DNA from: Haliotis cracherodii
Lineage: Eukaryota
Assembly (NCBI RefSeq): GCF_022045235.1
Contig: NW_027266308.1
Span: forward strand, 49,786,001-49,850,000
Length of the DNA stretch: 64,000 bases
Direction: 5' to 3'
The position numbers were made by a program, and so were the translations under genes. Below are positions 2,264 through 24,200 of this stretch, piece after piece (position 1 is the stretch's first letter; the number at the start of each line of letters is the position of its first letter). The notes below the pieces were generated by a model that saw only the letters and a program-made list of their open reading frames with translations, made no database searches and had not been told where the DNA came from.

Positions 2264-2427
2264 GAGTGAGTGAGTATGGTTTTACGCCGCTTTTAGCAAT
2301 ATTCCAGCAATATCACGTCGGGGTACACCAGAAATGGGCTTCACACATTGTACCCATGTCGGGAATCGAACCAGGGTCTTCGGCGTGACGAGCGAACGCT
2401 TTAACCATTAGGCTACCCGACCGCTCC
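2264..2427 (-). mobile_element. Short tRNA-derived SINE, family A (about 165 bp), downstream of the stop (probable 3' UTR)
   Basis: tRNA head (GGTAGCCTAATGGTTAAAGCG...GGTTCGATTCCC), (TCAC)n tail, 12-bp TSD taaaggggaagt. Confidence 0.9.
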
Positions 2428-2918: not shown

Positions 2919-3272
2919 TCATCTTGTGCCGAGCACATCTTTAAGAATTGCACTGGAGTTCTGTGGCGTGGACCTGCCGGAGCCTGGCTGACTGAGAGAC
3001 TCTCCTGACATTGGTGCCATAAGTGGATTGGTCTGTGTGACAGGAGACATGGGCCCCATGAGGATGTGGGGTTTGGTGGTAGCGGTCTGTTCCCCGAGCT
3101 GCAGGGGCATGGAGACATGTCTGGGGGCGGTGAATGGGTTGAACACAGGCTTCTGGCTCTCCTTGTGCTTGTCCTTCACCTCCTGGGCCATCTTCTCCGC
3201 CGGCATTCGGACTGGGGGTGGGGGAGGAGAGGACTCCTTCTCAAGGAACTTCACAAACAGTTGGGAGAAAGA
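2919..3272 (-). CDS. TRIP11: TRIP11/Gmap terminal coding exon (GA1 motif SFSQLFVKFLEKES, Pro-rich tail ending ILKDVLGTR*)
   Basis: tttcag acceptor; GA1 motif and C-terminal LKDxL motif; TGA stop at 2919-2921. Confidence 0.93.
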   Translation of the reverse strand, partial: SFSQLFVKFLEKESSPPPPPVRMPAEKMAQEVKDKHKESQKPVFNPFTAPRHVSMPLQLGEQTATTKPHILMGPMSPVTQTNPLMAPMSGESLSQPGSGRSTPQNSSAILKDVLGTR

Positions 3273-6200
3273 CTGAAAACGACAATAATGATTGTTTTTA
3301 AATGTTACAACATCCTTTTTTGTTTATAAACTCCTACAAACTATATATAATTTGAAGCCTATCCTCCAGCCATACAGGACAATGTTACACCAGGACAATG
3401 CGTAGGTGTTATTAATGTTTTTCTTGAGTGACCGCACTTCACTGTCGTAAATGATCACTACTCTTGTAACACTATGACACTCATCATTCTTTAGATATGA
3501 AAATATAGTTCTTTAAAACAGTTACTTCCTATCAACTTGAATGAGTGATGTCTCATGCAGCTTTTAGCAATACTTCAGCAATACTTGAGAAATATCTCAG
3601 CAATATTTCAGCAATACTTGAGAAATATCTCAGCAATACTTCAGCAATACTTCAGCAATATATCAGCTTCATACACTGTACTTGAGTAGAATTAAACCAG
3701 TGTCCTTGATGTGATGTGAGAATGTCGTAACCACTTAGCTACGTTAATCGCGAAGTCTGCCTGACAGTTTACCACCAATGAGCAACCCATTATGTATAGC
3801 TACAACCAGAAGTTCCTCCAGTACTACCAATGGCTCACCTGGTCCAGTGAAGGTGCCTTGCTCCCTGCATGGACAGGTGTGGTCGGTGGGGTGGGGCCCG
3901 CCCGAGGGGACCCAAACCGGAGGAATCCTGCTACCCAGCTGGTCTGCGTCTGATTAATCTGGGGAACAGAATGTCAACACTTACAATACATTCATTACAG
4001 TGGGATGCACTGTGTTCAGAAAGCAAAGTTAACACTGATAAATACACAACCTCATTTAAACATGTGTGCGAAATCGGCAGCACTGGAAGCGCTCGTTAAA
4101 TCTACAACATCATCATCATCATGATTAAACATGTTCATTATTGTTCCATTGAATAATGAACATTTGTAGGAAATGGCATGTGGAAATGTTGGAAATACAA
4201 TATCCGTTCCGGTGATTGGATTGGGAGCATTTTTCAATTGTGGTGCTTATCGGGCTGAATAGTTTACTGATGTAGCTCTAGGGCTGGGACGATACACCAA
4301 CAGTGTGATCCGATACGTATCACAATACCTTGCACACGATCCGATACATATCGCGATACTTGTATGTGCACAGTGGATGAAAATATTTACATTTTTACTA
4401 CTTATTTTCACTAGCAATTAGTGTTTGGTGTAACACTTATTTAAAAAAACCATTTAAGGTAGAATCAATACTTTTTACTTAGTGTGCGACTGTGATCGAT
4501 ACTTGTATCGAGAAGTAAAAAATCGCGATCCACCAGATATCGTGCCACCACTAGTAGATCGGCAGTGCCTTGACAGGAATGATTACTGGTCAAAATGATC
4601 TTCAGATCTCATTCACAGGAAGCGGTCTAAGTAGTACTGGTAGTCCTACATTGTCTTCAAATGAAGTATTCTCTTTACCTTGGCGTAGTCGTCAAGTTGG
4701 AAGTTGAGGACACCACCCATCATATGAATGACCTCATTCCGGCGACCAGTAGGAGTTTGGAAATAGCCAATCAGCATGTTTTTCATCAACAACCTGAGCA
4801 CAAAATAAACAGGACATGAGAGGAAAATCATAACTCATACATGACACAGCAGAAAGGATAAATAAGTGATACAACACACACGAACAGTCCCTCTATGTTA
4901 TATAGTGAATGAGTTGAGTTTCAACAGTATTTCAGTTATATCACAGTGTGTCAGCTTGATGTGGCAGGACGCCATCAGTGATGCAGTTTGGTGAAACCCA
5001 CAAGTATGAACATCGTTCTGACAAACCCAGAAGCAATCAGGGTCAATCTGGGATTTGTACCTAAGGGATGTAACTCTTTGCAGCGAATTCCGGGAACCTT
5101 AGATGCCTGAGTCACCCCTGTCCCTCTCCCCATATCATACAGACGAGGAAATATGTGTGTTGGACTTTTTAAAAATATTTCCATAGAAACCAAGTTAGAC
5201 TCTAAGAATGAGGTCAACTTGGAGGCACAGGTCTCAACACAATATATGTCGTCCTTTTAGAAACAGATAGAAAATACACAACTGCAGGTCTCCAAAGGTT
5301 ATATCATTTTTGCAAAACTATACAAATGCGTCACTGACTAAATGTGACCACTCACTTGTCAACCTTGGCCTCAGTGCTTGTGGTCAGCTTCCTGACTTCC
5401 TCCTCGGCTGCCTTCAGAGTCTTCTCTCGCAGCAGGACTGTAAACAGGAAGTGACGTGTCAACAGGTAACAACAACAGCTCAATGAAGCTTCAATGATTA
5501 GCAATTTCACACATTATTATTCCATAGCAAATTATTCATTAAGTGCTTTACAAAACGATATCAGCAATAATAAACAAAATAGATACATGCAAATAATTAA
5601 CATAACAAACAGTGAGAAAACAAGCAATAAAACACAGAAGGCAATAAATTAGCCAACCAAGGATCGTCTGGTGGGCTAGGGAAGGGAGAAGGCAGGCAGG
5701 CAGGCACTGGACGACCAGGATCGTGTGGTCGCCAAGGGAGGTAATTCTCCATGCTGAGTAGAACAACTACATCTACACAATGTGAACACGGTGCTGCTGC
5801 TGCTGACATACAAACTACGAATATCACAAAAGGTACTGACACTCATCCCTTCAGTACCTGATGTAATACTCATGGTTTGTACATCCAACTTAGCTCATGC
5901 GGTGACCAGGCCAGACAACACACTGTGGCGGCGGCCATCTTGACTTGCTGTGATAAAGCTGTTTCTATGACCAGTGGCTACACTGGAGAGGTGCTAGTGT
6001 TAGACTGGAACGATCTACTGCATCGACTACGATGTACACAGAAAGTCGGACTTCAGGGATGGTTCTAACAAGCATATGAAGACAATGCCATTTTCACACA
6101 ATGGACAATCTCAATATTACCACACATGATAACTGTTCTCACTTTTCATGTTACAATCATATGGATCAATATTATTACCATGGCAACATATCTTCCAATG

Positions 6201-9200
6201 AAATTTTTACTGCAATTCACCCAAATTCCCTTCCTGCATCCATCCAAATTACTAAAATTGGTGTCATATTCCTATAGTTACCATTACAATCAATATCTAC
6301 ATAATTACACAGGATTACATCAGCGTTATGGCTCACACCTAACTAAAATTGGTGTCACGTTCCTACGGTTACCATTACAATCAATATCTACATAATTACA
6401 CAGGATTACATCAGCATTACGGCTCACACCTAACTAAAAATGCCAGTTATACAAAAGTAGTCAAATAGTTTACACACATAGATATTTGGTTATTGCCGAT
6501 AGGTGTATGTTAGTCGGGCACTATAGTAACCTGTTAGGCTAACCATGTTAGTGTATCCAGCCACCAAGCACCACACAGTTGAAAACATACTTACAACATA
6601 GCGTTCATGCATGTTGTGGACAACCCGGGACGTTATCTCGCACGTCCTAACTCACTCCATTTCTCATGCAGTCTTGTAATGATATTCAGGTCCGAGCATC
6701 GACACAGGTCAAGCTCACAAATGTCTACTTTATACAAATGCAGTACAATCGTGATGAAGAAATACATGCTGTTCCAAAAGCTCAATCAATCAGCTGTGTT
6801 ATTTTACACCAACCAATGACAACATGCGTCTCTGCCAGATGGTTCCCTCCACAAGACTGCAGCATTTTGTCTCGGCCATGCTGATTGGTCAGTTGTTAGG
6901 ATAGGTTAGTCCATGCTGTTCGGTAAGATATTTATGTAATCTCGGCTAGTAACTTGAGGCCTCCTTTTTACTCAGAATTACCAGCTGAGATTAGACAAAC
7001 ATCAACACATGCAAGCCCTTTCATTCGAGCATAAAACATGCACAAATTTTGTCTACTGGGCCAAAGTTCCTACAGATTTAGATTTGTTTAAATCGGACAA
7101 ATTTCAATCATTTAGATTATAATTTCAAAACAATATTTCAAATCAGTCTCCAGTATAAGCCTACGAGATTGAATGTGATGTTTGCCTAATAAAACATAAA
7201 TGCTGCAATGACACTACTCCTGATTAACAACTGAACACATTATGGATGAACAATGATAGACATTCAATGAGATGATACGTAGAGGCGCTATCTGCCCGTT
7301 GTGACGAGGAATACAAGTACCCGTTTGCCATATATCAGTCAGCATCCTGAGGCGTGGATCTCTCAGGATTACCAGCTGATATTAAGAAACCAGGCTTAGA
7401 ATGGCAAAATCTGTAATCTTCTCCAAGAAAAACTACTCGTAAAATTTGAAGGAATCACCCCAAACCCAGAAATTGCAAAATTTTCTGTGCACACTCAAAG
7501 CAAGCAAATCTTGATTTAAAAATTGTAAAAAGGAAACACTGCTGTGTGCAATTTCAAAAAGTTAAAGCCAAACAACTTTGTGAGAAGCAAATCTAAAATA
7601 GCTCTGTCACACAGGAAGCACCAAACAGGGCAGTTAGCAACTCAAAAAAGGTTGAAAAATGAGCATAAGAAAATAATGAGAGGAATGAAACAAGTGAGTA
7701 AAAGCAATTAAATGTTGTGAAGCCAGGATATCTATCCCACCCCAGCCAGGCGCTCGAGAAATGAGAGACTCGGAATTACCAGCTGAGATTAAATAGATTC
7801 CCGAGGGACAAAAATCCAAAAAGGTGGGATGCTGGAAGCTTCGATTTTATCAACAAGAAACACCAGCTCCTTGAATCCAATGGTTGAACACCCAGTCCAG
7901 CTTTTTGTCAGTGTTAGTGTCATGATCTAAGCCAGTACCTTGAACACTCTCTTGTGTAGCCCCATGCTAGTTGATGTAAAACCACCCCGTGCACAGCTCA
8001 TGCAGGGTCACATACAGGGTCACATACAGGGTCACATACAGGGTCACATACACAACACACCCATGCAGTATCCAGTCCATGTAACACGTTACACATACTT
8101 AGTGTTATACAAATGTAGTGCTCATTCAGTAACAACAGATTCACAATACTAAACTGCTGCTGCAACAACTGATTTGAAAAAGTAACGAACACTTTTCTAT
8201 TCTCTCATGGAATTATCAATCTTACAATGATGATTGAAACAAAGCATTAAAGTAAAGGGCCTCGTTCCTGAAAAGCGATCTTAATGCTACGATGATCGTC
8301 GCCTAAGTAAACAGTACGGGAGTTACGATCACCTTAGCGTTAAGATCCCTTTGTGGAACAGGCCCATTGTTCTTGTCATGGTGTCATGTTAAAAGTTAGA
8401 TTTTTTATATTTCCCCTTAACTTTTCAACATTAGTTACCCCAAAAGGATTCTTCTTAATCATATCTCATATCAAAACGTATGTCTATATCATTTCACAAA
8501 CATTATTAATAGGTCAGTTTGGTTGTAAATTCAGACACTGAACAGCAGTCCTGACAGACGTGACATGGTTAGTGAAGGAGCACAGTTGATGTTAGAGACA
8601 AGGAGAGGATAGAGCCACCAGAAACTGGAGAGAACATCCAACACCTACCTTCCTCCTTCAACGCAGCAACAGCCTCCTCCTTCTTGTCCAGCTGTTCACT
8701 GAGACGAGATGCCGCCTCCAGTCCATCTGAGGCCTCCTCCAGCTCCGTCTGTAATAGTTGTAAGGCAGATAGTACATAAGAGGCGAGGACATATTAACAT
8801 AGCTGTCAACCCCTGGATGTCTAAATGCGTGAGAAGCCAAGGTGCAGGGGCTGCAAGCCCCGCTGGGTCCAGGGCTAAGCCCTGGTGTGGAGGCGCAAAT
8901 TATATTTTTATCTACATTTTATATGAATGCGTGAGAATTTCCCAACCTTGCGTGTGAGCGTGACATAGGTGATAAATGCTTGAGGCTCACGCGAGATGCA
9001 TGAGAGTTGACAGGTATGTATTAGGTGGGACAAAAACTATCAAATGAGACTTACAGTATAAAAGCTAGCGGAGTGGTGTTTTTTTTCCATAAATATGATA
9101 TCACTTTGGGTAAAAGAGAAAAGAATGTGCTGTGTGTCATCATTACTAATACAAGTAGTGTATCTTTTTTCTCTAGATGAAACCCCTATTGGGCTTCGAG

Positions 9201-12200
9201 GTTAGGATTGGTCCCATGAAATCTACATTGTAAGTAGTATACCTCATAAGAGACTAAACTGGTTGGGGTTGGGGACAGGATCAGTGATGTCACCTGACAC
9301 TGACAGCATGGGACATTGCTCATAATATAAAGACCCTAGGACTGAGAATCACATACCTTTGTAGAGTCGAGTGCTCTCTGCAGGGTGTTGACCTTGTCCT
9401 TCAGGAGTTTTATCTCATCCTGGTACCTCTCAGTGTCTGCAGCGATCTGAGCATCTTTATCTGCAATATGTATAGATGTTATACAACAGTGCCACACTGA
9501 TCCAAAACAAGAAGCTACAAATCTCCTACACTAGGGTATCATTATGAAACATAACAAGACCCCTTGTACCACCCTTAAATGAGAGAGTTACCCACCCTGC
9601 TGGAACTGTTCAAGCACCATCTGGAGGTTGGCAAGGGAGGCAGCATACTGCTGGCACTGGTCCTGCATGGCTGTCATCTGCATGTAGGCGGCGTCCCGCT
9701 GACTGGTCACCCCGTGCAGCTGGTGCTGCAAGGTCTCCACCTGCTCGCTGGCTGCTTGGCTGCAGACGGACAAGATGGTAGATTCATATAGTCAAGAAGG
9801 AAAGTCAATAATCATCTTCATCTTTTGTAAGATTTGTGAAAAATGGCCAAATTATAGTTTGTTGTTTAACACTGCACTCAGCAATATTAAAACTGTATGA
9901 TGTAGCCTATAAATAATCAAGTCTGAATGAGTGAGTGAGTGAGTGAGTTTGGTTTGGCACTGCTTTTAACAATATTCCAGTTATATTGCGGTGTGTCAGC
10001 TTATTGTCGGAGGAATTGATGGAGTTCTTAGACCTTTACCACTTTGGTGAAACCCACGGGGTATGGGGCTGACAAACCTAGAAATATTATCGAGCAAACC
10101 CATTCGAACAACCCACAATCATAGGTTTCTGGCGTAGCCAATGGATGCAACTCTGCACAGCAAATTGCGGCGCCTTAGACAACTGGGCTACCCGTACCCC
10201 CTAAGCAAGTCTGAACCAGACAAACCAGTGGTTGAAATGATGAGCACATGTTGGGGTGCAATGACACATAGTCAACCAAGCCACTTGGCCTGACCACCTG
10301 ATTCATTCACTCATCTTTCACAACCAGCACAGGTAGCTTGGGTGAGTGAGTGAGTGAGTGAGTATGGTTTCACGCCGCTTTTAGCAATATTTCAGCAATA
10401 TCATGGCGGGGGACTCCAGAAATGGGCTTCACACATTGTACCCATGTCGGGAATCGAATCTGGGTCTTCAGCGTGACGAGCGAACGCTTTAACCACTAGG
10501 CTACCCGACCGCCCCTAGGTATCTTGGGACAGTACAAACCCCTTGGGGACTCCAGGTTTAATAGCTAATTACATGCGTGTGTCTATCCAGGAATGTCTCA
10601 CCTGGCATTCTGCACCGCTGAACTGGATGAGAGGATCTTCTCCTCGGCCACAGCGAGCCTGTTCCTCAACTCCTTCTCCCTCTCCTCGGCCTCCAGAGCC
10701 TCACCAGTGTAGCCCTCCTCAATCTGCAATAAATACCACATATTGGATAACATATTTCTTGGATCAATCTTGAACAACCAAATGCAGATATGAACTATAC
10801 TACTCAACAAAACAGTGAGTGAGTATGGTTTTACGCTGTTTTTAGCAATATTCCAGCAATATCACACATGAAATGGGCTTCACACATTGTACCCATGTCA
10901 GGAATCCAACCCGGGTCTTCGGCGTGATGAACGAACGCTTTAACAATTAGGCTACCCGACCTCCCCCTCAACAAAACATGCCATGACAGTAACTATAACA
11001 ATAGTTATAGTAACTATAGTAAAATGAAAGAATCAGGGGTCCTTAACATTTTAATAGTAGCATAATTAGCTACACACTTAGTAAAATGTGAGTGTGTGTC
11101 CTGAATAGGCTTGAGATTGTACCCATGTGGGATCAGGCCTAGTAGTGCCCAAGTGTATACCTGAAGCAAGTGCTGTCTCAGTCTCTCCAGTTCCCGACTC
11201 AGTTTCATTTCTTTCTCCTTCAGTCGGGCAATCTGCAACACAGATATAGACAATCAGATTCCTTTTCATTTGCAAGCTAAACACTGGACAAGTAATGATT
11301 AGCAAATGAATCAGTGACCTTTACCGGTACTAAGTCTATCTCAAGTATCTCCAAAACATATTTCTGAATTATACTGAGGCTAAAACACCAAAAGATTGAT
11401 TACCATGAAAATAATTAATATAAATATCTTATGTTCATTCTAAATCTTCTTGTCATTCTCCAGTAAGTCTCATGCACCAATCCTTTCTATGCAGGGGTAG
11501 GGATGGCCTAGTTGTCTAAGACGCCACAATTCGCAACTCAGTGTTGCACCCTTTCGGCAAGCCCAAAACTTACTATCATGTGTTTGAATCCCAGTTCTCC
11601 CTGATTATATTTCTAGGCTTGTCAGCACCACACCTGTGCTTGTGTGTTTCACCAAAGTGGTTAACGTCTGAGACCTGCATCACTTTGGACTGTCCCCCCA
11701 ACTGACATGCTGCGATATAACAGGAATACTGTTCAAAGCGGCGTTAAACCCAACTGACTCGCTCCTTCCTATGCCAAAGTCTCACCTCTTTATTCAGCTC
11801 CTCCACATCTGTGTGTTTCTGTCGGAGAGCCATGATGGTCTGGTCCCTCTCCTGCTGGTACTGAACTGTCTGCTGATGCAGTGAGGCGTTCTCCTGGACA
11901 AGGTGATCCACCTGCCCCTGCTCACCCTGCTGCTGCTGTAGCAGCGTCGTCAATGTCCCTGTCTTCTCACGCAGACTCGTCAACTCAAACTCCTTCTCTC
12001 TCAGGGACAAAGTCAGCTGATTATTGGAATCTTTCAACACCTGAAGTTCTGAATCTATTTCGGAGGATTTCTGCTTTGTGGATACACTTTCAGTTCTGAA
12101 GTCTTGGAGTTCTGTTTGTAAACCCTGAAGCTGAAATGTTAAATTATCAGCCTGCTTTTTAAAACTAGTCCTCTCAGCTTCTTTACTTGACACAACACTT

Positions 12201-15200
12201 TCCAGCTCATGAATCTTCGAAGACAATCCTTGAATCTTCAGGTCTCGATCATTTATTTCCTGCTGTAGTTCTGATAACCTGTCCTGACATTTCTGGAGTT
12301 CCACCATCTTGGTATTATACGTTGCCATGTCAACCGTTTCACTCATGTTAGACCTTCCCAACAACTCACCATACTTAACTTCTAATTCGTTATATTTCTG
12401 TTTATAATTTAATAGTTCATTTTGAGTTTTAAGCAGAGTCTGAGTTTTATCTTCAAACTGAGGAACAAGATTAGTATAGTTGCGATTTAGAGCTTCAAAC
12501 TGTTCCGTCTGTGTGGACACTAACGCAGTAAGTCTCTGAATCTCATTATGATACGTCACACTCTCCTGATGTTTCTGGTTGAGGTAGGTGATCATCTGTT
12601 CTCGCTCAGCCTGAAATGTCATCATCTGCTTGCTTAGATTATCCTTGTCCTGGAGGAGAGAATTGATCTGTGTCCCTTGAGTTTCCTGAGAAGAGTCTTG
12701 CAGCACAGCCAGAAGTGTGTCATTTTTCTGTTTCAGTGCCTCAATCTCCATTTCCCGATCGCGAACGAGACGAGACAAGTTCTGCAATGCCTCCCTCTGC
12801 ATGTCATCCACAGGATTCTCCCTGTTCTGAAGCTGGTGGTTGTCCTCCTGCAGCTTGTTCAGGGCGCTCTTCTCGGCAGTCACAACACTCATCAACCGAT
12901 GCACCTCAGCTTTCAGGGAACTTGATTCTCGGGACTTCTCGGTCATCACTGCCATAATCTGTTCTCGCTCCATCTTCAAGGCCTTGACCTCATTCTCCAG
13001 CTTATGCACACTGACGAGAGACTTATCCCCATGTGACGTCAGGGACTTGGCCTCCAGCATTGTTAGCAATGAGGCATTATTGCTCTGAAGTTCCTGAATC
13101 ACTAGATCCTTCTCTTGCAGGCGAAGCTGAAGTTCACCGATCTCTTTTGAAATCATCTCAATCTTGTTGGATGTGTCACCATCAAAATCATCCTTATCAA
13201 CAAATTCTTCTTCATCCCACTTCCTTGATGGTGAAGTGTATTCTATTGCTGCCTTCTCTGGATATTCAAGAGCAGGGAGGCCTGGCTGAGAATCTCCTTC
13301 ATTGAGTAATTGCAGCTTTTTAGCATCCACAAGGGATGAAGCTCTTGTCAACTTGTATTTCAAATCAGCAATTTCTTCATCCTTGTCTGCAGATTTCTCT
13401 TGTAGAATCAAAATTAAATCATCCTGTCTTGCAAGCTTTACTCTTTCTTCTTCGATTTCCCTAATATACCCTTCATGTTTTTCATTTAACTGAGTAATTC
13501 CTGCCTTGTGGTCATTAATCAGGGACTCCTGACTGTGGACAGTTTCCTCTAACCTAAATATTTTGTCTTTACATGACGCAAGCTCTTTCTCCAGCTCAGT
13601 GATTATCTCCAGCGTCTTCTGCTGATCCATTTCATCAGGCTTCTGTTGTTCCATGTTCATCTTATTCACCTCAATCTCTGTCCTTAATCTCTGAATCTCC
13701 TCCTTCGAATCAGCAAGGAGTTTCTCCATACCCTTCATGCTTTCCATGAGGACCTCCTGCTCCTTCAGATGAGCACACAACTCCTCATACTCCGAATTTA
13801 GCTCAATATTTGCAGACTTCAGTGAAGAAATTTCATCATCTTTCTCTTTCAAAATAGAAGTCAGCTGCAACTGGCTGTCGACAGACGTCTGCATGGTGTC
13901 TTTAGTCATGTCCAGTTCTGATTTTAAAGAGTTAATCTGAGACTGCAGATCACTGATTGCAAGCTCCTTCTCATGACAAGTCTGCATCATGGCCTGATGG
14001 TCTTGCTGTAACGCTGTGGCATCCTTGTCTTGGCTGCTCTGCAGTTCCTGGATGTAACTCTCATAATGTTTAGTCTGAGCATGGAGTTTGTCCTCCAACT
14101 GACTAATCTCCTTTTCAAGATTTACCTTGTCTAAGTTCACAGCATCAAACTGAGTCTCCAACACAGAGATTCTGTCGTGCAGAGGTTGTGATGCCTGCCG
14201 AGTACTTTCTTGCTTTTGAACTTCGAACTGCTCAGTTTGAACAGACAATCTCTGATTCTCAGCCAAAAGCTGAGAACATCTAGTCTTTTCATGCTCACAG
14301 GCAGTATAATACTCATCAAGTTTTGATCTCAGTTCAGAGATTTCATTTTGCAATTCCTCCATCTCTTTACTCACCGCCTCCTTCTGGGAGTTGTGTACCT
14401 GAGTTTGTTCGTTCCTCTCCTGCCAGTCCTCAATCTCGTCCTCAGCTTCTTGCAGTCTCTCCCTGAGGTCCTTGTTCTCCTCTACTAGGCGGGTGTGGTC
14501 CTCCCTCATCTCCTTCAACTTGGCCACCTTCCCTGTAATCTCCTGTTTCACTCTCCCAAGCTCCTCCTGGAGCTCGCGCTTGTCCATATGTAGATCATTC
14601 ACTGCCACTGCAGCATTCTGACACTTCTCCTTCAAATCTTGAATCTCCTTCGCTTTATCAGACTCCATCTTCTCCAGTTTAGCCTGAAGCTCCTCAACCA
14701 GAGCCTCATCCGGTCCTTCAGCAGCATCAGTCAGGTCTTTTGATGATGAAGCAGCTTCCTCAATCTGAGCCCGGGACTTATCCAGTTCTTCAGTGAGGTT
14801 TACAATCTCTGTATCTTTTAGGGAAAGACTGGTGTTAAGGGTGTCGACCTGCTGCGAGAGGTCGTCCCGTATGCTGATGAGTTTGTCCATGGCCTGCTGA
14901 TGCTGCTGGTCCAGCTCCTCCAGACTGGACTCCAAGTCCAGCTTCTCCTGTTCCATGGCTTTCATCTCCACCTCATGCTGCTGGACTCTCTGTTCCAGCT
15001 GCTGCTGCTGCTGCTGGGGAGACGCTACAACACAAGGTCAAACTGATGTAAGGACAACCAATCAAAACTGATATACAGTACATGTACATGTTTCAAGATG
15101 ATAACTTACTACATAAAATAGACTTACAACAATTGTAGCGGTAAGACAGCTTCATGGAACTCGATCCTGATTTGGTTGTTTGTTATTCAATGTCATAGTT

Positions 15201-18200
15201 ACAATATTCTAGCAATATAGCAGCAACCAGCATATAAGTGATTATTGAACAGACAAACCAGTAACAATTGCCAATGGGGTGCAATGACAAGTAATCAACG
15301 AAATCATGGAGCCTGACGAACCCATCAATTTAGTCCCTTCTTACGAAAAACATAGCTTACTGGGAACTTCTTCTAACCCAGAATCCCCATGGACGCTAAA
15401 TAGTCTTACCTTGTTTTTCACTTTGTAGCGACTTCTCCAATGTGGATACATTGTTTTCTAAACGTTTAATCTTTTCTTCAAGTGCAACCTGCAAAACAAG
15501 ACAAGATTGACAACAACAATATAAGCAGCGTTTATGAAACACAGAAACAAGAAGATCCTCCTTGGACACAATAAGCAAACTTTGTCCAAACACCTTTAAC
15601 AGCAATCCAAAGTGTCAGTCAGGCTGACTGTTTTTTGAAAGTATTTATCCTATCTCACAATAAGAAAAATTCCAAGAAATAAATTATAGACAAAGTCACT
15701 TCGATCTTCAGATTTACTGGTAATGCCAATTTTGAAGAGCTCAGCCTGTCATAAGTGTACATACTGAGAATCATGAGGTACAAATACTGTATTCGACGTA
15801 CTAAAAAGTCCCGCTCTAATAAGCATCCATGGTGATATTTGCTAACATATTGGCGAGTGAACTATCCCAATTAGCACCCCTTCCGATTGATCAATGTACA
15901 CAAGACTTATTTATTCGTGTATAATACGCACTTGTGTGTTAAATGCACCCTTAATTATGGGCAATTTAATTCTGGACAATATATCTGTCGTGTATGATAT
16001 GCACATACTTTTTCTTTAATATCATTTCAGGCTGTCAGCATAAACTACGAAATTTACAATCTTTTGACTCTGATTTTTTTCTCACCAAAATTATATTCTA
16101 ACAAGAGCCCCCTATTTCTAATTTTGAGAGCGCCACGGACGCTTATTACGTTGAATACGGTAGTACGTAAAATGGTGCATGATGGATGCAAAGAGCCATG
16201 GGCAGGATCTCACCTTGTCAGCCTCCAGCTGATCTCGCTCCTCCTCCAGCTGCAGGTTGGCGTCACTCAGTTTTTGAGCCTGGGCAGCAAACGTTTCAAT
16301 GTCGGCCTCTAGAGTTGTCTCCCCTGTCTGCAGCAGATCTTGGTGTTCTGCCACGATTGTCTCCTCGACCACTTCTCCTGTCTGAGAGTCCAAACACAGC
16401 AATGAGATACAATGGCTCAGGTTTCATGGGAAATGTAGTGTCACTACTTATTCTGAAAGAGCTGAAAATCTATTTGATGGAATTGACAACTCATAATATT
16501 CAGTACATTCATCTCTGCACATGACCACAAAAAGAGCCGATTTTTTGTAATGAGCATCCAGCGGTCAACAAAAGCAGCAGGCAGTTGATCAAGCAAAGTT
16601 ACATCGTCTTCCTGTCCTCACTGGTCCATAAACACGCATCAACCCTTCTTTCCATCAATATTATTTTCCTGTTCAGGTTTCACTTCTAGTGGCTAAAGGT
16701 ATAATTAAGTCGATCCTTGGATGATTATTTGTCTATTTCTATTCTCATGAATTCTGAAAAACTTGTTATTCCATAGCAATCCTAGGGGGAATAGGTTAGA
16801 TATTTGATAATTACCTGAGTCCTCTCTACTGCCTGGGATTTCTTCTCCTGACGTTTCACCTCAGCAAGACCCTGGCATATAAACAGTTCAAATGAATAAA
16901 CAATTCTAATGATGCTCAGATATTGTCAGTGTTATGGGCACAAAAGTGAAGGGTCCTTGTTGTAACACTAATGTTAAATAGTAGACATTGAGTGGACCCT
17001 ACATTGAAATACCATAGGGCAAAACTTCAAGGTTCCCAAGACGCATATTAATTTCAAATACTGATTATAACAGCACACTTTTTCCAGACCCCATGTCTAG
17101 CATCATTCTTGCAAACAAATAAAACTATTACGGAGGCACTTATATAATATTTTTTACCGGTTTACAGCTAAATCAACCAAGATATAAATCACAGCACTAA
17201 CTAACTAGCAGGTGGTCCAGTCATCTAAGGCACAGCAATTAGATGTGCAGAGTGGCATCCTTTGGGCATGCCAGAAAAATATCAGTGAGGGTTCGAATCC
17301 TGGTTCGCCCAGATTATGTTCCTAGGTTTGTGAGCACCATAACCGAGCTTGTGGGTTTCATCAAAGTGGTAAACCTTTGGGACCTGCCCGACTTCGGCTT
17401 CCAACCCACTTTAAGCTGACATGCCGTGATATAACTAGAACACTGTTTAAAGGGGCATAAAAAATCCAAGTCTCTCACTCACACCACTAACAACAATCAC
17501 CTTCTGTGCAAGTGCGATGTTCAGTTCCATCTCCTTTTCCTGAAGCTGTTTCCGCAGCTGTAGTAAAACTTCTTCAAGAGATTCTTTCTCCAGCTGCCAA
17601 TCAGATTTCACAAATTCGAACTGATCGATGTCTGTCTTATATTTGTCGACCTCTGTCTGGAGCTGTTCGACCTTGAGGTCAAGTTCACGATTCCTGCGTG
17701 AGAGTTCAGATATGTCGCTGCCATCAACTGTCCTGTGTAATAACATTGAACACCATCACCATATGCAGTGGGTATAGGAAGCCAGATGATAACATCCACT
17801 GGTTATATTGTATAACACATCAGGAATGGGCATTCATGCAAGTTTTTATAAGCAAAACAAAAAATAGTATCCCACAATTAATTCAAACCAAATGATAAAA
17901 TGAGATTGCATTGCTATGAAATTCATTACAGATTCACCTACAGTCTTTGCATGGAGTTTACTCAAATAATCAAAGCTGAAACTATAACTTTTTATAAAAG
18001 ATGGAAATGGAATATTTGTAAAAAATGTCCAAACTGCTAGAATACTGTTAATATACTACTCAAAAGAAGTCAAGAACACTCACTTTTTTCAAAAGATTAT
18101 AGTTCATCTGTCATGGCTGGTGGGTATTGCAACACCCAGCCTTCCAATTTGCGAGTGTTCTTTAACTTGTTTTGAGTAGTATACATGCTGTTATTAGGTG

Positions 18201-21200
18201 GGATGTATAATGTGACCAAAGATGGGAATATGAAGACAAAGAAGTAGAATTAAAGCTTGAGAAAAACAAACAGTTGTTTATCTAACAGTTAATATCTGCA
18301 ATAATGAATTATGCAACCAAGCTTGCTTTAATATGGACGAGTCCGTCAACTATTTTCACATGGATCGATTATTGTCATGAAGCTAAAATTAAATACTGCT
18401 TTGCAGGGAAGCTTTACATATGAAGGAATACCTGAGAACCAATATAGTTCTATAAATGTCTCACCTAACACTGCCAGTGGAGAGACTGTCGTTGAGGGTT
18501 GATACAGAACTGGATTCATCCACATCTAGAAAAAAAGGGGCAAGATATCACATCTGCAAATGGAACGTCCTCAATTAATTTATCCTCATACACTATCCTT
18601 ATAAAACTGAATTACAATCATTTTTGAAATAATGGGCATTTGTATGGTGAAACAGGGGAGATAACTGACACTGACCATCTTGCAGCTGCCCCTTCAACCT
18701 GGAGATGGTGTCTTCACATCGACTCCTCTCCTGGGCCTGAGTGGTTGCTGCTCGCTCCAACAGAGTTATCTGTTCTTGGCACTTCAGATTCTGTTCTCTC
18801 AGGTACAGGTTTTCTTTCTCAAGTGATGCAACTAGTTCTGAAATGGGCAAAATAATCCTCATTATCAAAGAAATAATGACATAAAACGAACAACCACCAA
18901 CATTGCCTAACATATTTTCTTGAGTATAGCACACATTTTTTTCCAAGAAACACACTTGTGTAGAGGGAAGTGTGCATAATACACGCCACAATGAATTTTA
19001 ATGTTTTTGTCCCCAAATGCAAAGATATAACCTTCAGAAATGAAATAATGTACACTCTTAAACCTGTACAATAATAATCAGATGATCAAACAAATTAGTT
19101 TGTGTCATGCATATCACTAGGATGGCTATAGTTTTCCCAAAATTGAACAAGACTGATAAAAACTGGAACATAATGTAGTTGAAATCGTCTGCAGACTTGA
19201 AAGGTCATGAATTAATTACCTGCAGTGACCTGCTGATGACCGGGACTGCCGAGAGACTCCACAATGGCCGCTGCCTCAGTGGTCAGATGGGTACTGAGAG
19301 ACTTGACTTCCACCAGATTAGACTTCACCTGCCCTTGCTGTGCACACATGAACAGCCATTAGACGTACAGTAGTGGACGGCAACATCACAGTAATGAAAA
19401 CTGACATTTTACATTAACATGCTTCTCCTGCAGGACCAACAGTTCTATTTCATATTCATACTTGTCATTACATTCCTACCATTCCCTGTTTTGGAATGAC
19501 ACCTGCTTTCAAACAGCCATATTGACTATGATTTCTCCTGTTATAATGAGAGGTGTGACATCATCAAAGCTGCTGACTAGACAGTGCACACATCTGACTT
19601 GTCAACATTTGGTTCCTGTGAAGTACTGTATACCTATCAGAACTATCCATTCAGAATTTTTGTGCCCATGTCACGATGAGAAGGAAGAGTAAAATAGTGT
19701 GTATACTTTAATTTGACAAACATTCATAATTTGTCAAAAGGTTCCAGTTTTAATGACGACCTGCAACAATTACCGGTATGTTGAGTGAGTGAGTATGGTT
19801 TTACGCCGCTTTTAGCAATATTCCAGCAATATAACGGCAGGGACACCAGAAATAGGCTTTACACATTGTACCCAAGTCAATAATTGAACACGGGTCTTCG
19901 GCATGATGAGCGAACGCTTTAACCACTCGGCTACCCAACCACCCCACTAAAGTACCAAACCAATCAGGTGTTCGAAAACAGGTGATGACACTCGAGCAGT
20001 TTACAGTTACAGAGGACATCCCCTCTTTTATCAAGGATTATTTTTCTATCAGAATACAGCTGAATTCTGTTGCTGAAGTCATCACCTACCAGTATGAAAA
20101 CAAATTTAATTTTGATTCACTCATCCCTCAAAATATCAGCAATGTCGTGTGAACTGTTTGAAAGTAGGGGATGAGAGGATAGTAAAATGCATCCATATTG
20201 AGAATCAAACAATGTTGGGAATCAAGCAGACGCCTAACCATTCGAGACCAACAGCAATGATGATTGACTAAGCCATTAGTGCCATTGATTTAATATATTA
20301 ATCTCTTTACGATTCTGCATCTATTGTTGCATGTAGCTAACCTTCTGCCCCAAGACATAGATCTGATTGGCTAGTTTCTGCTTCTCATTCAGCAGACGGT
20401 TGCGTCTGCCTGCACTGTCATTGTCCATCTGGTGGCGTACATGCTGCAAGTCACTTAATACCTCTAAAGCATCAGCCTGGAACGGGGGCATTCATTGATG
20501 AATTCAAACAAAATATTGATTCAAGTTTCATCAGCAGTTCAGACAAATTAGTTATGATTTACATGAAAAGAGATGACGAAAAGGGCTCATTCTACCATGT
20601 GTCTAGTGATATTTACAATTAAAATTAAACATTACGAGGGATCAACAATGAAATGTAATTTATGTGCATTATGTTCTTCCTCCCAATGCAAAAACAAAGA
20701 CACATTTTGAAACATAAAGGGAATTCCAAGAGTCAATACAAAGGTACCACTCCGTTTTCTTAGTTTTTGCGAATTCAATTTCAGTATAACTGACGCGGTC
20801 AATGTATGGCATGCAGAAGAGGGGAGACAACTCACTGATCAACAGTGCAGACGGACATGCTGCAAGAGCAGTATCAGGTCATGTGTGAGGCAGAATGTAC
20901 ATGCAACATAGACATATCTTTACTTCTACATCATAACACTGGAGACTAAGACTAGCTATCGCTACATTCAACATCACTCAGGGCTCTTGTCAAGCATATC
21001 CAGATGCAAACCATGCGTCTTGTTGTTGTTGTTGTTGTTGTTGTCAAAAAATAGTTCAAAGTGACACAAGAAGTACTGCTGCAAATTTTAGTCAGGAACA
21101 TTAGCTTCAATCACAAGAATGCCTTACATATTATTCAAGCAAATTTTAGCATAGGCCCCCTACTACACAAAGAAATCTTGGAACAGCACCAAATTGATTG

Positions 21201-24200
21201 AATTTAACAGGTGCAGTAGTTTTCTGCAATTTCAGATACATTCCTAAGGAAAGTTGTCAAATGAGTGAACAAAGCTGAAATATACAAATACACTTAATTC
21301 CATGCAGAAAAGTAAGATGCAGCTGTCATAGTTGCATGCAAAGTTAGTCAAGGGGAGACAACTATCCAAGGGGAGATAAGTGCCTGCTGACAGTACATGG
21401 TTTGCATCCAGTTGCTCCAAGAGTCTCTGTTTTGCATCAAACAAAGATAGGCCAACCTGTCCGACTTCTTTTTCCAGTGAACTTTTTTCTGAGAGAGCTT
21501 CTGAAATATACAACAATGATAAGTAACAATGAGTCTTTTCAAGTCATATCTTAATGCTTAAAGTCAAAGCCAATGGGGGTTTCACTTTGCTTTCAAACTT
21601 ATCATCTAACACCCCCTTCATCTTCAGCAGGAGTAATCTTCATATATAACTTATATAATTATTTCTAAAATCGAACATGATTCGGTTTTTCAAGAAAGTT
21701 TGCTTGATACCCCAATAAAATGCACATGCTTGTTTAACTAAATTATAAATTTAAAAAATCAAACATGAGTTCACTGAAGGCTATTCTGATCAATATGCAA
21801 CAGCTGACTCACGTTCAAGAGCCTGCTTTAACTGTACAACGTCATCCCCAGCAGCTTGCTTCAGCGTCTCGAGCTCGGCCCGCTGGTCAGCGACAGTCGA
21901 GTCCAGGAGGGTGATCTTCTCTACATAGCTGTCTCTTTCATCCTGTAGTTTGCCCACCTCCGTCTGTAGTTCCTCCAACACTCCCTCCAGGTGGCGCTTT
22001 GCAGTCTCGATCTGCCATGTGCCATAAACAGATTAGTCTCTGCACATCTGCACAGGTTTGTCGATCATAGTAAAAGAACCATCATTTGTCCTAAAAGGGT
22101 TGTAACTTTGCCAACTTTGAAAATAATGACCTGATGAAATATCAGCAACAACCATTATAATTGCCAAATATACTACTAAAAAAGTTACGGACCACCCGAT
22201 TCTTTCATATTACTATATTCAGCGTTAAAAATTGGCACTAGTCCTGTACTCCTTGCCAAACTGCCCAATGGTTAAGGTATCATAAGGACTGGTAGAAAAT
22301 TGCCATTTATGAAGGGTTTTGCTATATGTTATCATTATAAGGACTAGTTGACTAAAAGTTTCTACCGCTTTGTATTTAATCTGTCATGGCCAGAGTAGTA
22401 TATCAGCAGCAACTATTATAATCTCGACTGCTGTTCACACATGAACCCTCACCTTGTTCTTCTCCGTATTGACCTTGGACAGCTGTGTGTGCAGGTCTTG
22501 CAGCTCACGTCGCAGATCATGAACATCAGACTCAGAGCTGAGTCCAGCTCGGTCAGCCTCAGGCAGGTTGGATGATCCATGCCTCACACTGTCATTGTCC
22601 CGACCTGACAGACATTTCATCATATCATTCAACAACAGACACTGGGAAAGACCCTTACTTTGTCTAGTTAAGCTATCTTTGCAACATAGCAACAGTAATA
22701 TTTACTAAACTGAACAAAACATCCTTCAATAATTTAATCATGGATGGATGCCATGTGGAGTACGCTAGATGCAGAAAATATATGCAAAATAAGTTGGCTA
22801 ACTTGAGTTAAGGCTGAAAGGTTAGGGGGTTTTTTCCATCAAAAAGATAGATTCATAACATACACACATACTTTTGAGAATAAAAATATGTAACATTATC
22901 ATAAAACACTGAGATTCACATTTTTACATCTTCTTGGTGAGATAGAAGTCGTGCCTGACAATGAAAAGTGAAAAAGCATGCGAAGTGAGATAATGTTACA
23001 TCACTCACTTTCACTCAGCTGCTGCTCAAGTGCTGCAATCTGTCTCTTGAAGTCAGCCACCTCCTGTTTGTGCTTCTTCTTAATGGCAGCCATCTTGTCT
23101 GTGTGTACATCCTGAAGGGAGACAACTTCATGTTGCTGATGATCCCGGGCTTGTACCAGCTGATGTTCCAACTCCTGCAATAACAGAGAATCAAACAGAC
23201 TTTAATCATAGCTTGTGAAGTCTCAATCAAAACATGACATACAAGCCAGTTTATTTGTAACAGCAAGTGTAACAGCTTCATTTGGGCATCAAGGGAGGAG
23301 GACAGTTTCAGAACAGATGAGAATGTAGTAAGCTGTAGTAAGCATCCGCCTCGAATAAGCGCCCTGAAAAGTAATCTTCAGAAGTGGCTACTTTGAAAAC
23401 CGAAAAAGATCACATTTTCTTTTGTATATTACAAAAGTAACGCAGAAGTCGCATATAATTGCCTAGTAAATTAATGAAAACATTTTTGGTTTCATCAACA
23501 TTTGAACTAAGTTTGAACTATTTTTGAAAACAAATAACTTTTGTGTATGGTTTTAATAAGCACACATTTGTCAATTTCCTATGCGCCCAGAACTTTTATT
23601 ACAGAAAATATGCTAGACCAATTTATAGATTGTATTACCTGATAATCAATACATTGATCTGTTTTACAATATTTATTTTCATGTGAGTATTAAAGTAAGA
23701 TTTAGACAGCAAAATTGTTATTTATGTGTAAAACTTCCCCCAGGATTGTCTCTATGACAAGGACATGCTCTACCACCACTGGGCTTCTCCCTTAATAGCT
23801 GAATAATGCTGAATGTGTCATTACACAGCAAACAAACAAGATACTCGCTTAATCCTTATCTCATTGTGTTTAACCTGGTTGACAAACTATGTCTAGGCCT
23901 AATCTATTTTATTTATTCTTTATAGATTTTCTCGGCCAGTATGCCAAGAAGTAGATAAGAAAAATTACAAAATGGTGTGATTAATCACCACTATAAAATT
24001 CCGGATATTATTTTTAAAATATCAGTTCACTATATAATCCAAACTTTGCCTTTTCACCTTTAAACTGCTTTTGAAAAGCCACTTGAAATAAACACACTTT
24101 CAATCAAATGTGCCTTTGGTCACGCTCCGATATGTTAGGTGGTAGTAAAATAAAACATCTAGAACTTGTAGGCAGCTAGGAGTGTATACTCCCCAGGGAG

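What the first reader, a model, noticed from the sequence alone, without database searches (positions are those of the whole stretch)
5809..7798. Four-hairpin intronic microRNA cluster (mir-216-like, mir-216b, mir-216a, mir-12) inside TRIP11/Gmap
Seen: four sense-strand hairpins in the intron just before the GRAB-domain exons, with 5p arms matching miR-12 and the miR-216 family. The ORF track cannot show them. Established: Drosophila mir-283, mir-304 and mir-12 lie in that order in a Gmap intron, and miR-283/miR-304 are miR-216 family members. Inference: host gene and cluster order (216b/283, then 216a/304, then 12) have been kept since the protostome ancestor, so the golgin pre-mRNA also serves as a pri-miRNA.
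Basis: partly seen in the sequence, partly recalled or inferred. Interest (0 to 1): 0.85.

Follow-up and report, generated by a model that had tools for sequence, protein, structure and literature searches.

The report
Known miR-216/miR-12 cluster in TRIP11 intron
Four real microRNA hairpins (three of the miR-216 family, then miR-12) lie on the coding strand of one intron of the Golgi tether gene TRIP11/GMAP-210, just before its GRAB domain, but this gene-microRNA pairing has already been published as an ancient bilaterian/protostome feature.

Summary
Four minus-strand hairpins lie at 7714-7803, 7307-7396, 6914-7005 and 5805-5889. They have pre-miRNA geometry, miR-216a, miR-216b, miR-216a and miR-12 seeds, and covariance-model matches. 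Their mature arms occur exactly once in the 1.18 Gb genome.

All four sit in one GT..AG phase-1 intron (8648..5438) of a TRIP11/GMAP-210 orthologue. The GRAB domain starts at the end of the next exon.

A metagenome scan with the miR-12 arm gave 50 animal contigs. Eighteen carry TRIP11 exons around mir-12 on the same strand. The intron sits at the same position and phase in all 12 contigs that carry the upstream exon end and all 9 that carry the downstream exon start.

The deep synteny is already published: PMC11848845 lists 216~trip11 (Bilateria) and 12~trip11 (Protostomia). The claimed fixed order holds only in part. Contigs show b-a-12, a-b-12 and a-b-a-12 arrangements. The first hairpin (H1) has no full-length orthologue.

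Verdict: a correct reading of an already known system, with some added detail at intron level. The scan holds a separate note on H1 (s1-832084).

The parts
7714..7803 (-). H1: miR-216a-seed hairpin. Predicted 5p arm 7791..7769, 3p arm 7756..7735.
   Evidence: Rfam mir-216 33.4 bits, E 8e-4. Own model R1 59.5 bits. Fold -33.9 kcal/mol, z -3.0. Geometry. Only the 5p arm aligns to other contigs.
7307..7396 (-). H2: miR-216b/miR-283-type hairpin. Predicted 5p arm 7384..7362, 3p arm 7349..7328.
   Evidence: Rfam mir-283 36.7 bits, E 1e-4. R1 69.6 bits. The 5p arm is identical to the bgl-/lgi-miR-216b printed in PMC7328434. The full hairpin aligns to L045.
6914..7005 (-). H3: miR-216a-type hairpin. 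Predicted 5p arm 6993..6971, 3p arm 6956..6935.
   Evidence: Rfam mir-216 53.7 bits, above the gathering score. R1 76 bits. Fold z -3.9. The full hairpin aligns to L045, L042 and L061.
5805..5889 (-). H4: mir-12 hairpin. Predicted 5p arm 5872..5851, 3p arm 5837..5816.
   Evidence: Rfam mir-12 46.6 bits, E 6e-8. Fold -42.6 kcal/mol, z -6.6. Aligned with 37 distinct mir-12 hairpins; basal stem shows compensatory changes.
5438..8648 (-). Host intron (3211 nt, GT..AG, phase 1, splits a Val codon) that holds all four hairpins.
   Evidence: Splice sites read. Reading frame is kept across the junction. Same position and phase in 12 contigs at the donor and 9 at the acceptor.
8649..8748 (-). TRIP11 exon upstream of the miRNA intron.
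   Evidence: tblastn of P0004 residues 1667-1698, 72% identity. Homologous exons lie upstream of the hairpins in 12 contigs.
5356..5437 (-). TRIP11 exon downstream of the intron. Its last residues begin the GRAB domain.
   Evidence: P0004 residues 1699-1726. Pfam places GRAB at 1720-1760 in P0004.
4679..4793 (-). TRIP11 exon encoding the core of the GRAB domain.
   Evidence: Pfam GRAB E 0.011 on this exon alone. P0009 residues 1721-1782 and P0004 residues 1724-1766 align here. GRAB in P0009 is at 1716-1761.
2919..3275 (-). Last coding exon of TRIP11, with the stop codon.
   Evidence: P0004 residues 1797-1897, 50% identity. 60% identical to the corresponding exon of L045.
2919..61168 (-). Approximate extent of the TRIP11/GMAP-210 coding region in the window.
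   Evidence: Colinear tblastn hits of P0004 and P0009 from N-terminal residues 12-102 (61168..60866) to the C-terminus. The 1097-aa exon 11747-15037 hits named TRIP11 proteins at E about 1e-70.

Best explanation
This is the conserved Mir-216/Mir-12 microRNA cluster in its ancestral host gene, TRIP11 (Drosophila Gmap, GMAP-210).

Four canonical pre-miRNA hairpins lie in the sense orientation in one phase-1 intron. That intron directly precedes the exons for the Arf-binding GRAB domain.

The most likely mechanism is canonical. RNA polymerase II transcribes the TRIP11 pre-mRNA, or a transcript that starts inside it. The Microprocessor cuts each hairpin out of the intron about 11 bp above the basal junction. 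Dicer removes the 12-14-nt loops. The 5p arms are then loaded as guides, with seeds AAUCUCA twice, AAUAUCA once and GAGUAUU once.

What is shown: hairpin structure, family identity, uniqueness in the genome, the intronic sense position, and the same intron position and phase in other animal DNA.

What is inferred: actual processing, dominance of the 5p arm, and use of the host promoter.
For: - Family identity comes from Rfam covariance models.
- Hairpin stability exceeds that of shuffled sequence.
- Duplex geometry and CNNC motifs fit pre-miRNAs.
- Covariation across 28 miR-216-type hairpins is strong. Of all cells, 93.3% are paired, against 36-48% when partners are slid. The covariation score is 0.458 against about 0.1. 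The A/C at seed position 5 covaries with U/G on the 3p arm, 14:13.
- In the mir-12 alignment of 38 hairpins, 6 of 17 pairs show compensatory changes.
- The exact mature arms occur only here in the 1.18 Gb genome.
- The host is TRIP11.
- The splice sites are GT..AG and the frame is kept.
- Eighteen metagenome contigs carry TRIP11 exons flanking mir-12 on the same strand. The donor ends with the same split codon in 12 of 12 contigs, and the acceptor in 9 of 9.
- Inside the intron, DNA similarity to those contigs is confined to the four hairpins.
- The trip11~Mir-216 and trip11~Mir-12 linkage is published (PMC11848845).
Against:
- Three of the four hairpins score below Rfam's gathering thresholds.
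- H1 has a G:U-rich 3p arm with a weaker apical stem, and no full-length orthologue among the contigs.
- In Drosophila, mir-283 levels do not correlate with mir-304 or mir-12 (PMC3150300). A single host-driven transcript is therefore not the whole story there.
- About 13 related contigs show mir-12 with no TRIP11 exon or mir-216 hairpin within up to 10-12 kb. L068 and L051 show the same, and there mir-12 sits beside an antisense homeobox exon.
Confidence: 0.9

Rival explanations
1. The cluster is a real miRNA cluster, but it is transcribed wholly or partly from its own promoter inside the TRIP11 intron. The golgin pre-mRNA would then not be the main pri-miRNA.
For: In Drosophila, mir-283 expression is uncorrelated with mir-304 and mir-12 in the same Gmap-hosted cluster (PMC3150300). 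About 850 nt of intron lie upstream of H1. The host gene was lost around the Mir-216/217 cluster in jawed vertebrates while the miRNAs persisted (PMC11848845).
Against: The sense orientation and the exact intron position have been kept across many contigs. This is what dependence on host transcription predicts. No promoter evidence of any kind was obtained here.
Confidence: 0.25
2. H1 (7714-7803) is a decaying or non-processed duplicate. Functionally the cluster would then have three hairpins, as in L029 and L045.
For: Outside its 5p arm, H1 has no full-length match in any contig, whereas H2, H3 and H4 do. Its nearest neighbours are only 51-57% identical over the flanks and 3p arm. Only 17 of 23 nucleotides of the 5p arm are paired. 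It has the lowest Rfam score of the four. L045 has no H1-like hairpin within 1.3 kb upstream of its b-type hairpin.
Against: The 5p arm differs from H3 by one base. The fold still beats all 200 shuffles. A CNNC motif lies at +18. A first-position a-type hairpin also exists in L041, L042 and L061.
Confidence: 0.3
3. The hairpins are chance inverted repeats or repeat-derived foldbacks, not miRNA genes.
For: None beyond the sub-threshold Rfam scores of three hairpins.
Against: The arms are single-copy in the genome. Covariation is far above the controls. Orthologous hairpins sit in the same intron in many contigs.
Confidence: 0.01
4. The plus (antisense) strand is the productive one for some of the hairpins.
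For: The antisense copies still score on the models: mir-216 40.9 bits for H3 and mir-12 33.0 bits for H4.
Against: The sense copy scores higher at every hairpin. The conserved family seeds are on the minus strand.
Confidence: 0.03

Closest known systems
Drosophila mir-283~mir-304~mir-12 cluster in Gmap
   Same: The host gene is orthologous (TRIP11/Gmap). The orientation is sense and intronic. A b-type (283-like) hairpin is followed by an a-type (304/216a-like) hairpin and then mir-12 (PMC12714197, PMC3150300, PMC2486268).
   Different: The window has a further a-type hairpin (H1) upstream. Its a-type arms keep the 216a-like 3' half rather than the diverged 304 form. The position of the fly intron could not be checked here.
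trip11~Mir-216 and trip11~Mir-12 intragenic structures of Metazoa (PMC11848845, Mol Biol Evol 2025)
   Same: It is the same host-miRNA pairing. The paper dates Mir-216 in trip11 to Bilateria and Mir-12 to Protostomia, and its species set includes the molluscs Crassostrea gigas and Lottia gigantea.
   Different: In the text I could read, the paper does not state which intron is involved or the order and number of paralogues. Those details were worked out here on anonymous contigs.
Vertebrate mir-216a/mir-216b/mir-217 cluster (MIR217HG)
   Same: It has two Mir-216 paralogues followed by a third miRNA, in one cluster.
   Different: In jawed vertebrates the cluster lies in a non-coding host after loss of the trip11 paralogue. 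Only cyclostomes keep it in trip11 (PMC11848845; PMC6668398 abstract). The third member is Mir-217, not Mir-12.
[quoted passage not shown]
   Same: The H2 arm is identical to bgl-/lgi-miR-216b. [quoted passage not shown] All three have small-RNA reads in Biomphalaria (PMC7328434).
   Different: Those reports list two miR-216 genes. This locus has three miR-216-type hairpins.

Membership tests
MIR-216 family (mir-216a/b, mir-283, mir-304; Rfam clan CL00094) | 5p arm with seed AAUCUCA or AAUAUCA at nucleotides 2-8, followed by the GCUGG core | tested here: met
   H1, H2 and H3. The core columns are invariant across 28 hairpins.
MIR-216 family (mir-216a/b, mir-283, mir-304; Rfam clan CL00094) | Score at or above the Rfam gathering threshold | tested here: inconclusive
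   H3 scores 53.7 against 53.5 (met). H1 scores 33.4 against 53.5 and H2 scores 36.7 against 50 (below threshold), though with E 8e-4 and 1e-4. The own model R1 gives 59.5-76 bits, but these three hairpins were in its training set.
MIR-216 family (mir-216a/b, mir-283, mir-304; Rfam clan CL00094) | Hairpin supported by compensatory changes | tested here: met
   Twelve of 22 pairs have double changes. Paired cells are 93.3% against 36-48% in slid controls.
MIR-12 family | 5p arm with seed GAGUAUU and a conserved mature sequence in a hairpin | tested here: met
   The arm at 5872..5851 matches the Rfam consensus and 37 other distinct mir-12 hairpins. Fold z -6.6. The Rfam score of 46.6 is below the gathering score of 55.
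Bona fide canonical miRNA (MirGeneDB-style criteria) | Reads from both arms with 2-nt 3' overhangs and homogeneous 5' ends | not testable with these tools
Only the predicted geometry is available.
TRIP11 / GMAP-210 / Gmap golgin | C-terminal GRAB (Arf-binding) domain | tested here: inconclusive
   The GRAB exon alone gives Pfam E 0.011 and 16 bits, below the cut-off of 26. It aligns to the GRAB stretch of named TRIP11 proteins.
TRIP11 / GMAP-210 / Gmap golgin | Long coiled-coil protein colinear with named TRIP11 orthologues | tested here: met
   The 1097-aa exon hits vertebrate TRIP11 at E about 1e-70. Exon-by-exon matches are colinear from the N- to the C-terminus.
TRIP11 / GMAP-210 / Gmap golgin | N-terminal ALPS motif | not tested
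   An exon at 61168..60866 matches residues 12-102 of P0009. The amphipathic motif itself was not analysed.
Conserved intragenic structure trip11~Mir-216/Mir-12 (PMC11848845) | miRNAs on the sense strand of an intron of trip11 | tested here: met
   All four hairpins lie on the minus strand inside intron 8648..5438 of the minus-strand gene.

The most novel reading that the evidence does not exclude
The cluster has stayed in exactly the same TRIP11 intron since at least the protostome ancestor. This is a phase-1 intron that splits a Val codon about 20 residues before the GRAB domain. Over the same period the number and order of Mir-216 paralogues were reshuffled by duplication and differential loss (a-b-a-12, b-a-12, a-b-12). 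On this reading H1 is either an ancient first-position paralogue or a lineage-specific third copy. Such intron-level fixity would point to a mechanistic coupling between splicing or expression of the GRAB-encoding 3' end of the golgin and cluster output.
Probability: 0.5. Interest if true: 0.4.

Novelty: already known. Interest (0 to 1): 0.27.

Why it matters
This locus is a clean example of a miRNA cluster and a protein-coding host that have stayed together for over half a billion years. It is useful as a synteny marker and for asking whether host and miRNAs are functionally coupled.

The pairing itself is already published, so this window adds little that is new. What it adds is:
- evidence that the same intron and phase are used in many unrelated animal contigs;
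- evidence that paralogue number and order vary;
- a third miR-216-type hairpin whose status needs small-RNA data.

Tried and rejected
TRIP11 loci of named molluscs (P0004 Bulinus, P0005 Elysia, P0001) could not be fetched.
- **Joined coding sequence.** I did not build or search one.
- **Self-targeting of the host.** The roughly 2.9 kb downstream of the stop codon holds no 7-mer site for miR-216a or miR-12 and one for miR-216b. There is no support for this idea.
- **Orthology of the a-type copies.** Identity over flanks and 3p arms does not separate the candidates: H1 51-57%, H3 59-67%. It remains unresolved whether H1 matches the first-position hairpin of L041, L042 and L061.
- **Chance metagenome hits.** L030, L039 and L064 are bacterial, inside a 1211-aa ORF with a poor fold. 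They were excluded.
- **Supplements of PMC11848845** are not held.
- **Literature on a third invertebrate Mir-216 paralogue.** The search found nothing relevant.
- **Earlier scan notes, searched by words**, gave nothing on the organism's identity.
Full report
**1. The observation**

Reading 5600-8100 on the minus strand shows four arms at the stated starts. Arms with seed AAUCUCA start at 7791 and 6993. An arm with seed AAUAUCA starts at 7384. An arm with seed GAGUAUU starts at 5872.

At gathering thresholds, Rfam reports one family in the whole window: mir-216 at 6929-7001 on the minus strand, 53.7 bits. A permissive scan of 5000-9000 adds three more minus-strand hits:
- mir-12 at 5812-5878, 46.6 bits, E 6e-8;
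- mir-283 at 7315-7402, 36.7 bits, E 1e-4;
- mir-216 at 7729-7799, 33.4 bits, E 8e-4.

The antisense copies score lower throughout.

Each 101-nt piece folds into one long hairpin, at -33.9, -28.6, -33.2 and -42.6 kcal/mol. The z-scores against dinucleotide shuffles are -3.0, -2.1, -3.9 and -6.6.

I derived the 3p arms from the fold with 2-nt overhangs. This gives arms of 22-23 nt, loops of 12-14 nt and paired basal stems. A CNNC motif lies 17-19 nt past the predicted 3' cut in all four.

In the organism's own 1.18 Gb assembly, the exact arms occur only at this locus. Rfam mir-216 and mir-12 find nothing else.

**2. The host gene**

A 1097-aa open exon (11747-15037, minus strand) matches named TRIP11 proteins of vertebrates at E about 1e-70. 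It also matches gastropod proteins at 33-35% identity.

Exon-by-exon tblastn is colinear along the window. The queries were a Bulinus protein (P0004) and a fish TRIP11 (P0009). The matches run from an N-terminal exon near 61 kb to the stop codon at 2919-2921.

The exons next to the cluster were read directly:
- Exon 8748..8649 is followed by GT.
- Exon 5437..5356 is preceded by AG.
- The frame is kept across the junction, and one Val codon is split after its first base.

P0004 residues 1698/1699 flank this intron. Pfam places GRAB at 1720-1760 in P0004 and at 1716-1761 in P0009. The domain therefore begins at the end of exon 5437..5356 and runs through exon 4793..4679. That exon alone gives GRAB at E 0.011.

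**3. Related sequences from elsewhere**

I therefore scanned the metagenome collection with the miR-12 arm and obtained 53 contigs.

Three of them are bacterial chance matches inside a long ORF. The other 50 fold as mir-12 hairpins.

With only the window's exons as queries, tblastn found homologues of the upstream exon in 12 contigs. It found homologues of the downstream exons in 14. All lie on the mir-12 strand and in the expected order, and 18 contigs have at least one such exon. Independent gastropod and vertebrate TRIP11 proteins hit the same flanks in 13 contigs.

The splice sites agree in every case:
- At the donor, all 12 contigs end the exon on GAA plus one further base and then GT. 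That base is G in 11 contigs and T in L036.
- At the acceptor, all 9 contigs read CAG followed by the last two bases of a Val codon.

The cluster therefore occupies the same intron, at the same position and phase, in every contig where this can be seen. The contigs are anonymous. I cannot name their taxa.

**4. The miR-216-type hairpins**

I aligned 28 of these hairpins without reference to structure.
- RNAalifold predicts 22 pairs, 12 of them with compensatory changes.
- In the pair count, 93.3% of cells are paired, against 36-48% when partners are slid by 1-3 columns.
- The covariation score is 0.458 against about 0.1.
- No shuffle reached the observed values on four of the five measures.
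- The base that distinguishes the two seeds (A or C at arm position 5) covaries with its 3p partner, 14 A-U to 13 C-G.

A covariance model built from this alignment finds three minus-strand hits in the window and no more. It also finds 304-like hairpins in L024 and L026 that were not in the training set.

Rfam run on five contigs gives the same classification: mir-216, mir-283 and mir-12.

Thirty-eight mir-12 hairpins likewise show compensatory changes in the basal stem.

Inside the window's intron, nucleotide similarity to the contigs is confined to the four hairpins.

**5. Order and number of paralogues**

| Source | Order |
|---|---|
| Window | a-type (H1), b-type (H2), a-type (H3), mir-12 (H4) |
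| L029, L045 (closest by exon identity; same 216b arm) | b, a, 12 |
| L026 (283- and 304-like arms) | b, a, 12 |
| L021, L027, L035, L041 | a, b, 12 |
| L042, L061 | a, b, second a-type with a different 3' half, 12 |
| L016, L020 | b, a, 12, but cut off upstream |

H2 and H3 align over their full length to hairpins of L045, L042 and L061. H1 aligns only over its 5p arm. Identity over flanks and 3p arms does not resolve whose orthologue H1 is.

'Order kept since the protostome ancestor' is therefore only partly borne out. A b-type hairpin, followed by an a-type and then mir-12, is common but not universal.

**6. Possible exceptions**

About 13 closely related contigs carry mir-12 with no TRIP11 exon and no mir-216 hairpin. 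L023 has 9.8 kb upstream and L053 has 12 kb downstream with neither.

L051 and L068 have mir-12 next to an antisense paired-like homeobox exon.

Large introns could explain this. In L026 the upstream exon is more than 10 kb from mir-12. I could not decide the matter either way.

**7. What is known**

- PMC11848845 (Mol Biol Evol 2025) lists 216~trip11 among the families that arose in sense introns at Bilateria. It lists 12~trip11 at Protostomia and 217~trip11 at Chordata. Its species set includes Crassostrea gigas and Lottia gigantea. It notes that cyclostomes keep Mir-216/217 in trip11.
- PMC12714197 states that miR-283 is nested in Drosophila Gmap.
- PMC3150300 names the 283~12 cluster with mir-304. 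It reports that mir-283 levels do not follow those of the other two.
- PMC2486268 relates miR-304 to miR-216a.
[quoted passage not shown] The 216b arm is identical to H2, and the other two differ by one base from H3 and H4.
- PMC12261956 annotates bgl-miR-216b as intronic in a protein-coding gene.

**8. Mechanism and limits**

The anatomy fits canonical intronic miRNAs that the Microprocessor releases from a polymerase II transcript running through the TRIP11 intron.

Whether that transcript starts at the TRIP11 promoter is an inference. The constant sense orientation and intron position favour it. The Drosophila data on mir-283 caution against assuming it.

Processing, arm choice and the status of H1 therefore remain untested.

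A quick look for self-targeting of the host 3' region found nothing notable.

**9. Verdict**

Noticed in passing
G000:C6:15410776-15475513 (own genome, outside the window): A large tandem array with a spacing of about 376 bp or multiples of it. Each unit carries a 19-mer two mismatches away from the miR-216b arm. It accounts for most of the roughly 2000 two-mismatch hits in the genome. It looks like a satellite with a chance resemblance, not miRNA genes.
   Followed up: no
window 6251-6439: A 91-bp unit repeated 2.1 times (93% matches) inside the host intron, between H3 and H4.
   Followed up: no
window 7999-8052: A 12-bp microsatellite of 4.5 copies, just upstream of H1 in the intron.
   Followed up: no
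window 2285-2426, 10373-10514, 10834-10992, 19801-20034: A short interspersed repeat recurs in TRIP11 introns and the 3' region. In some searches it shows up as near-identical spurious ORFs of about 40-50 aa.
   Followed up: no
L068:10727 and L051 (mir-12 at 1021 in mir-12 orientation): The mir-12 hairpin lies 200-600 nt from an antisense paired-like homeobox exon. No TRIP11 exon or mir-216 hairpin lies within about 8-10 kb. This may be a lineage where mir-12 left TRIP11.
   Followed up: partly
L018, L022, L023, L037, L038, L040, L043, L050, L053, L056, L057, L058, L067: A clade of near-identical mir-12 hairpins with no mir-216 hairpin or TRIP11 exon on the contig. L023 has 9.8 kb upstream and L053 has 12 kb downstream with neither. 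L058 holds two miR-12 arms 427 nt apart, and the second has a degenerate 3p arm.
   Followed up: partly
L036:1266-2222: A compact TRIP11 3' end. mir-12 lies about 190 nt after the upstream exon, the next exon detected is the GRAB exon about 600 nt from it, and there is no mir-216 hairpin. It looks like a lineage that kept mir-12 in the intron but lost Mir-216.
   Followed up: partly
L026:6102-6267: A palindromic element scores on both strands with Rfam mir-2513 (69.9 and 67.6 bits, below the gathering score of 89). By its coordinates it lies between the 304-like hairpin and mir-12 of that contig's cluster.
   Followed up: no
L030, L039, L064: The 21-nt miR-12 pattern also occurs by chance inside a 1211-aa ORF of bacterial contigs. 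Exact 21-mer hits in metagenomes therefore need a fold check.
   Followed up: yes
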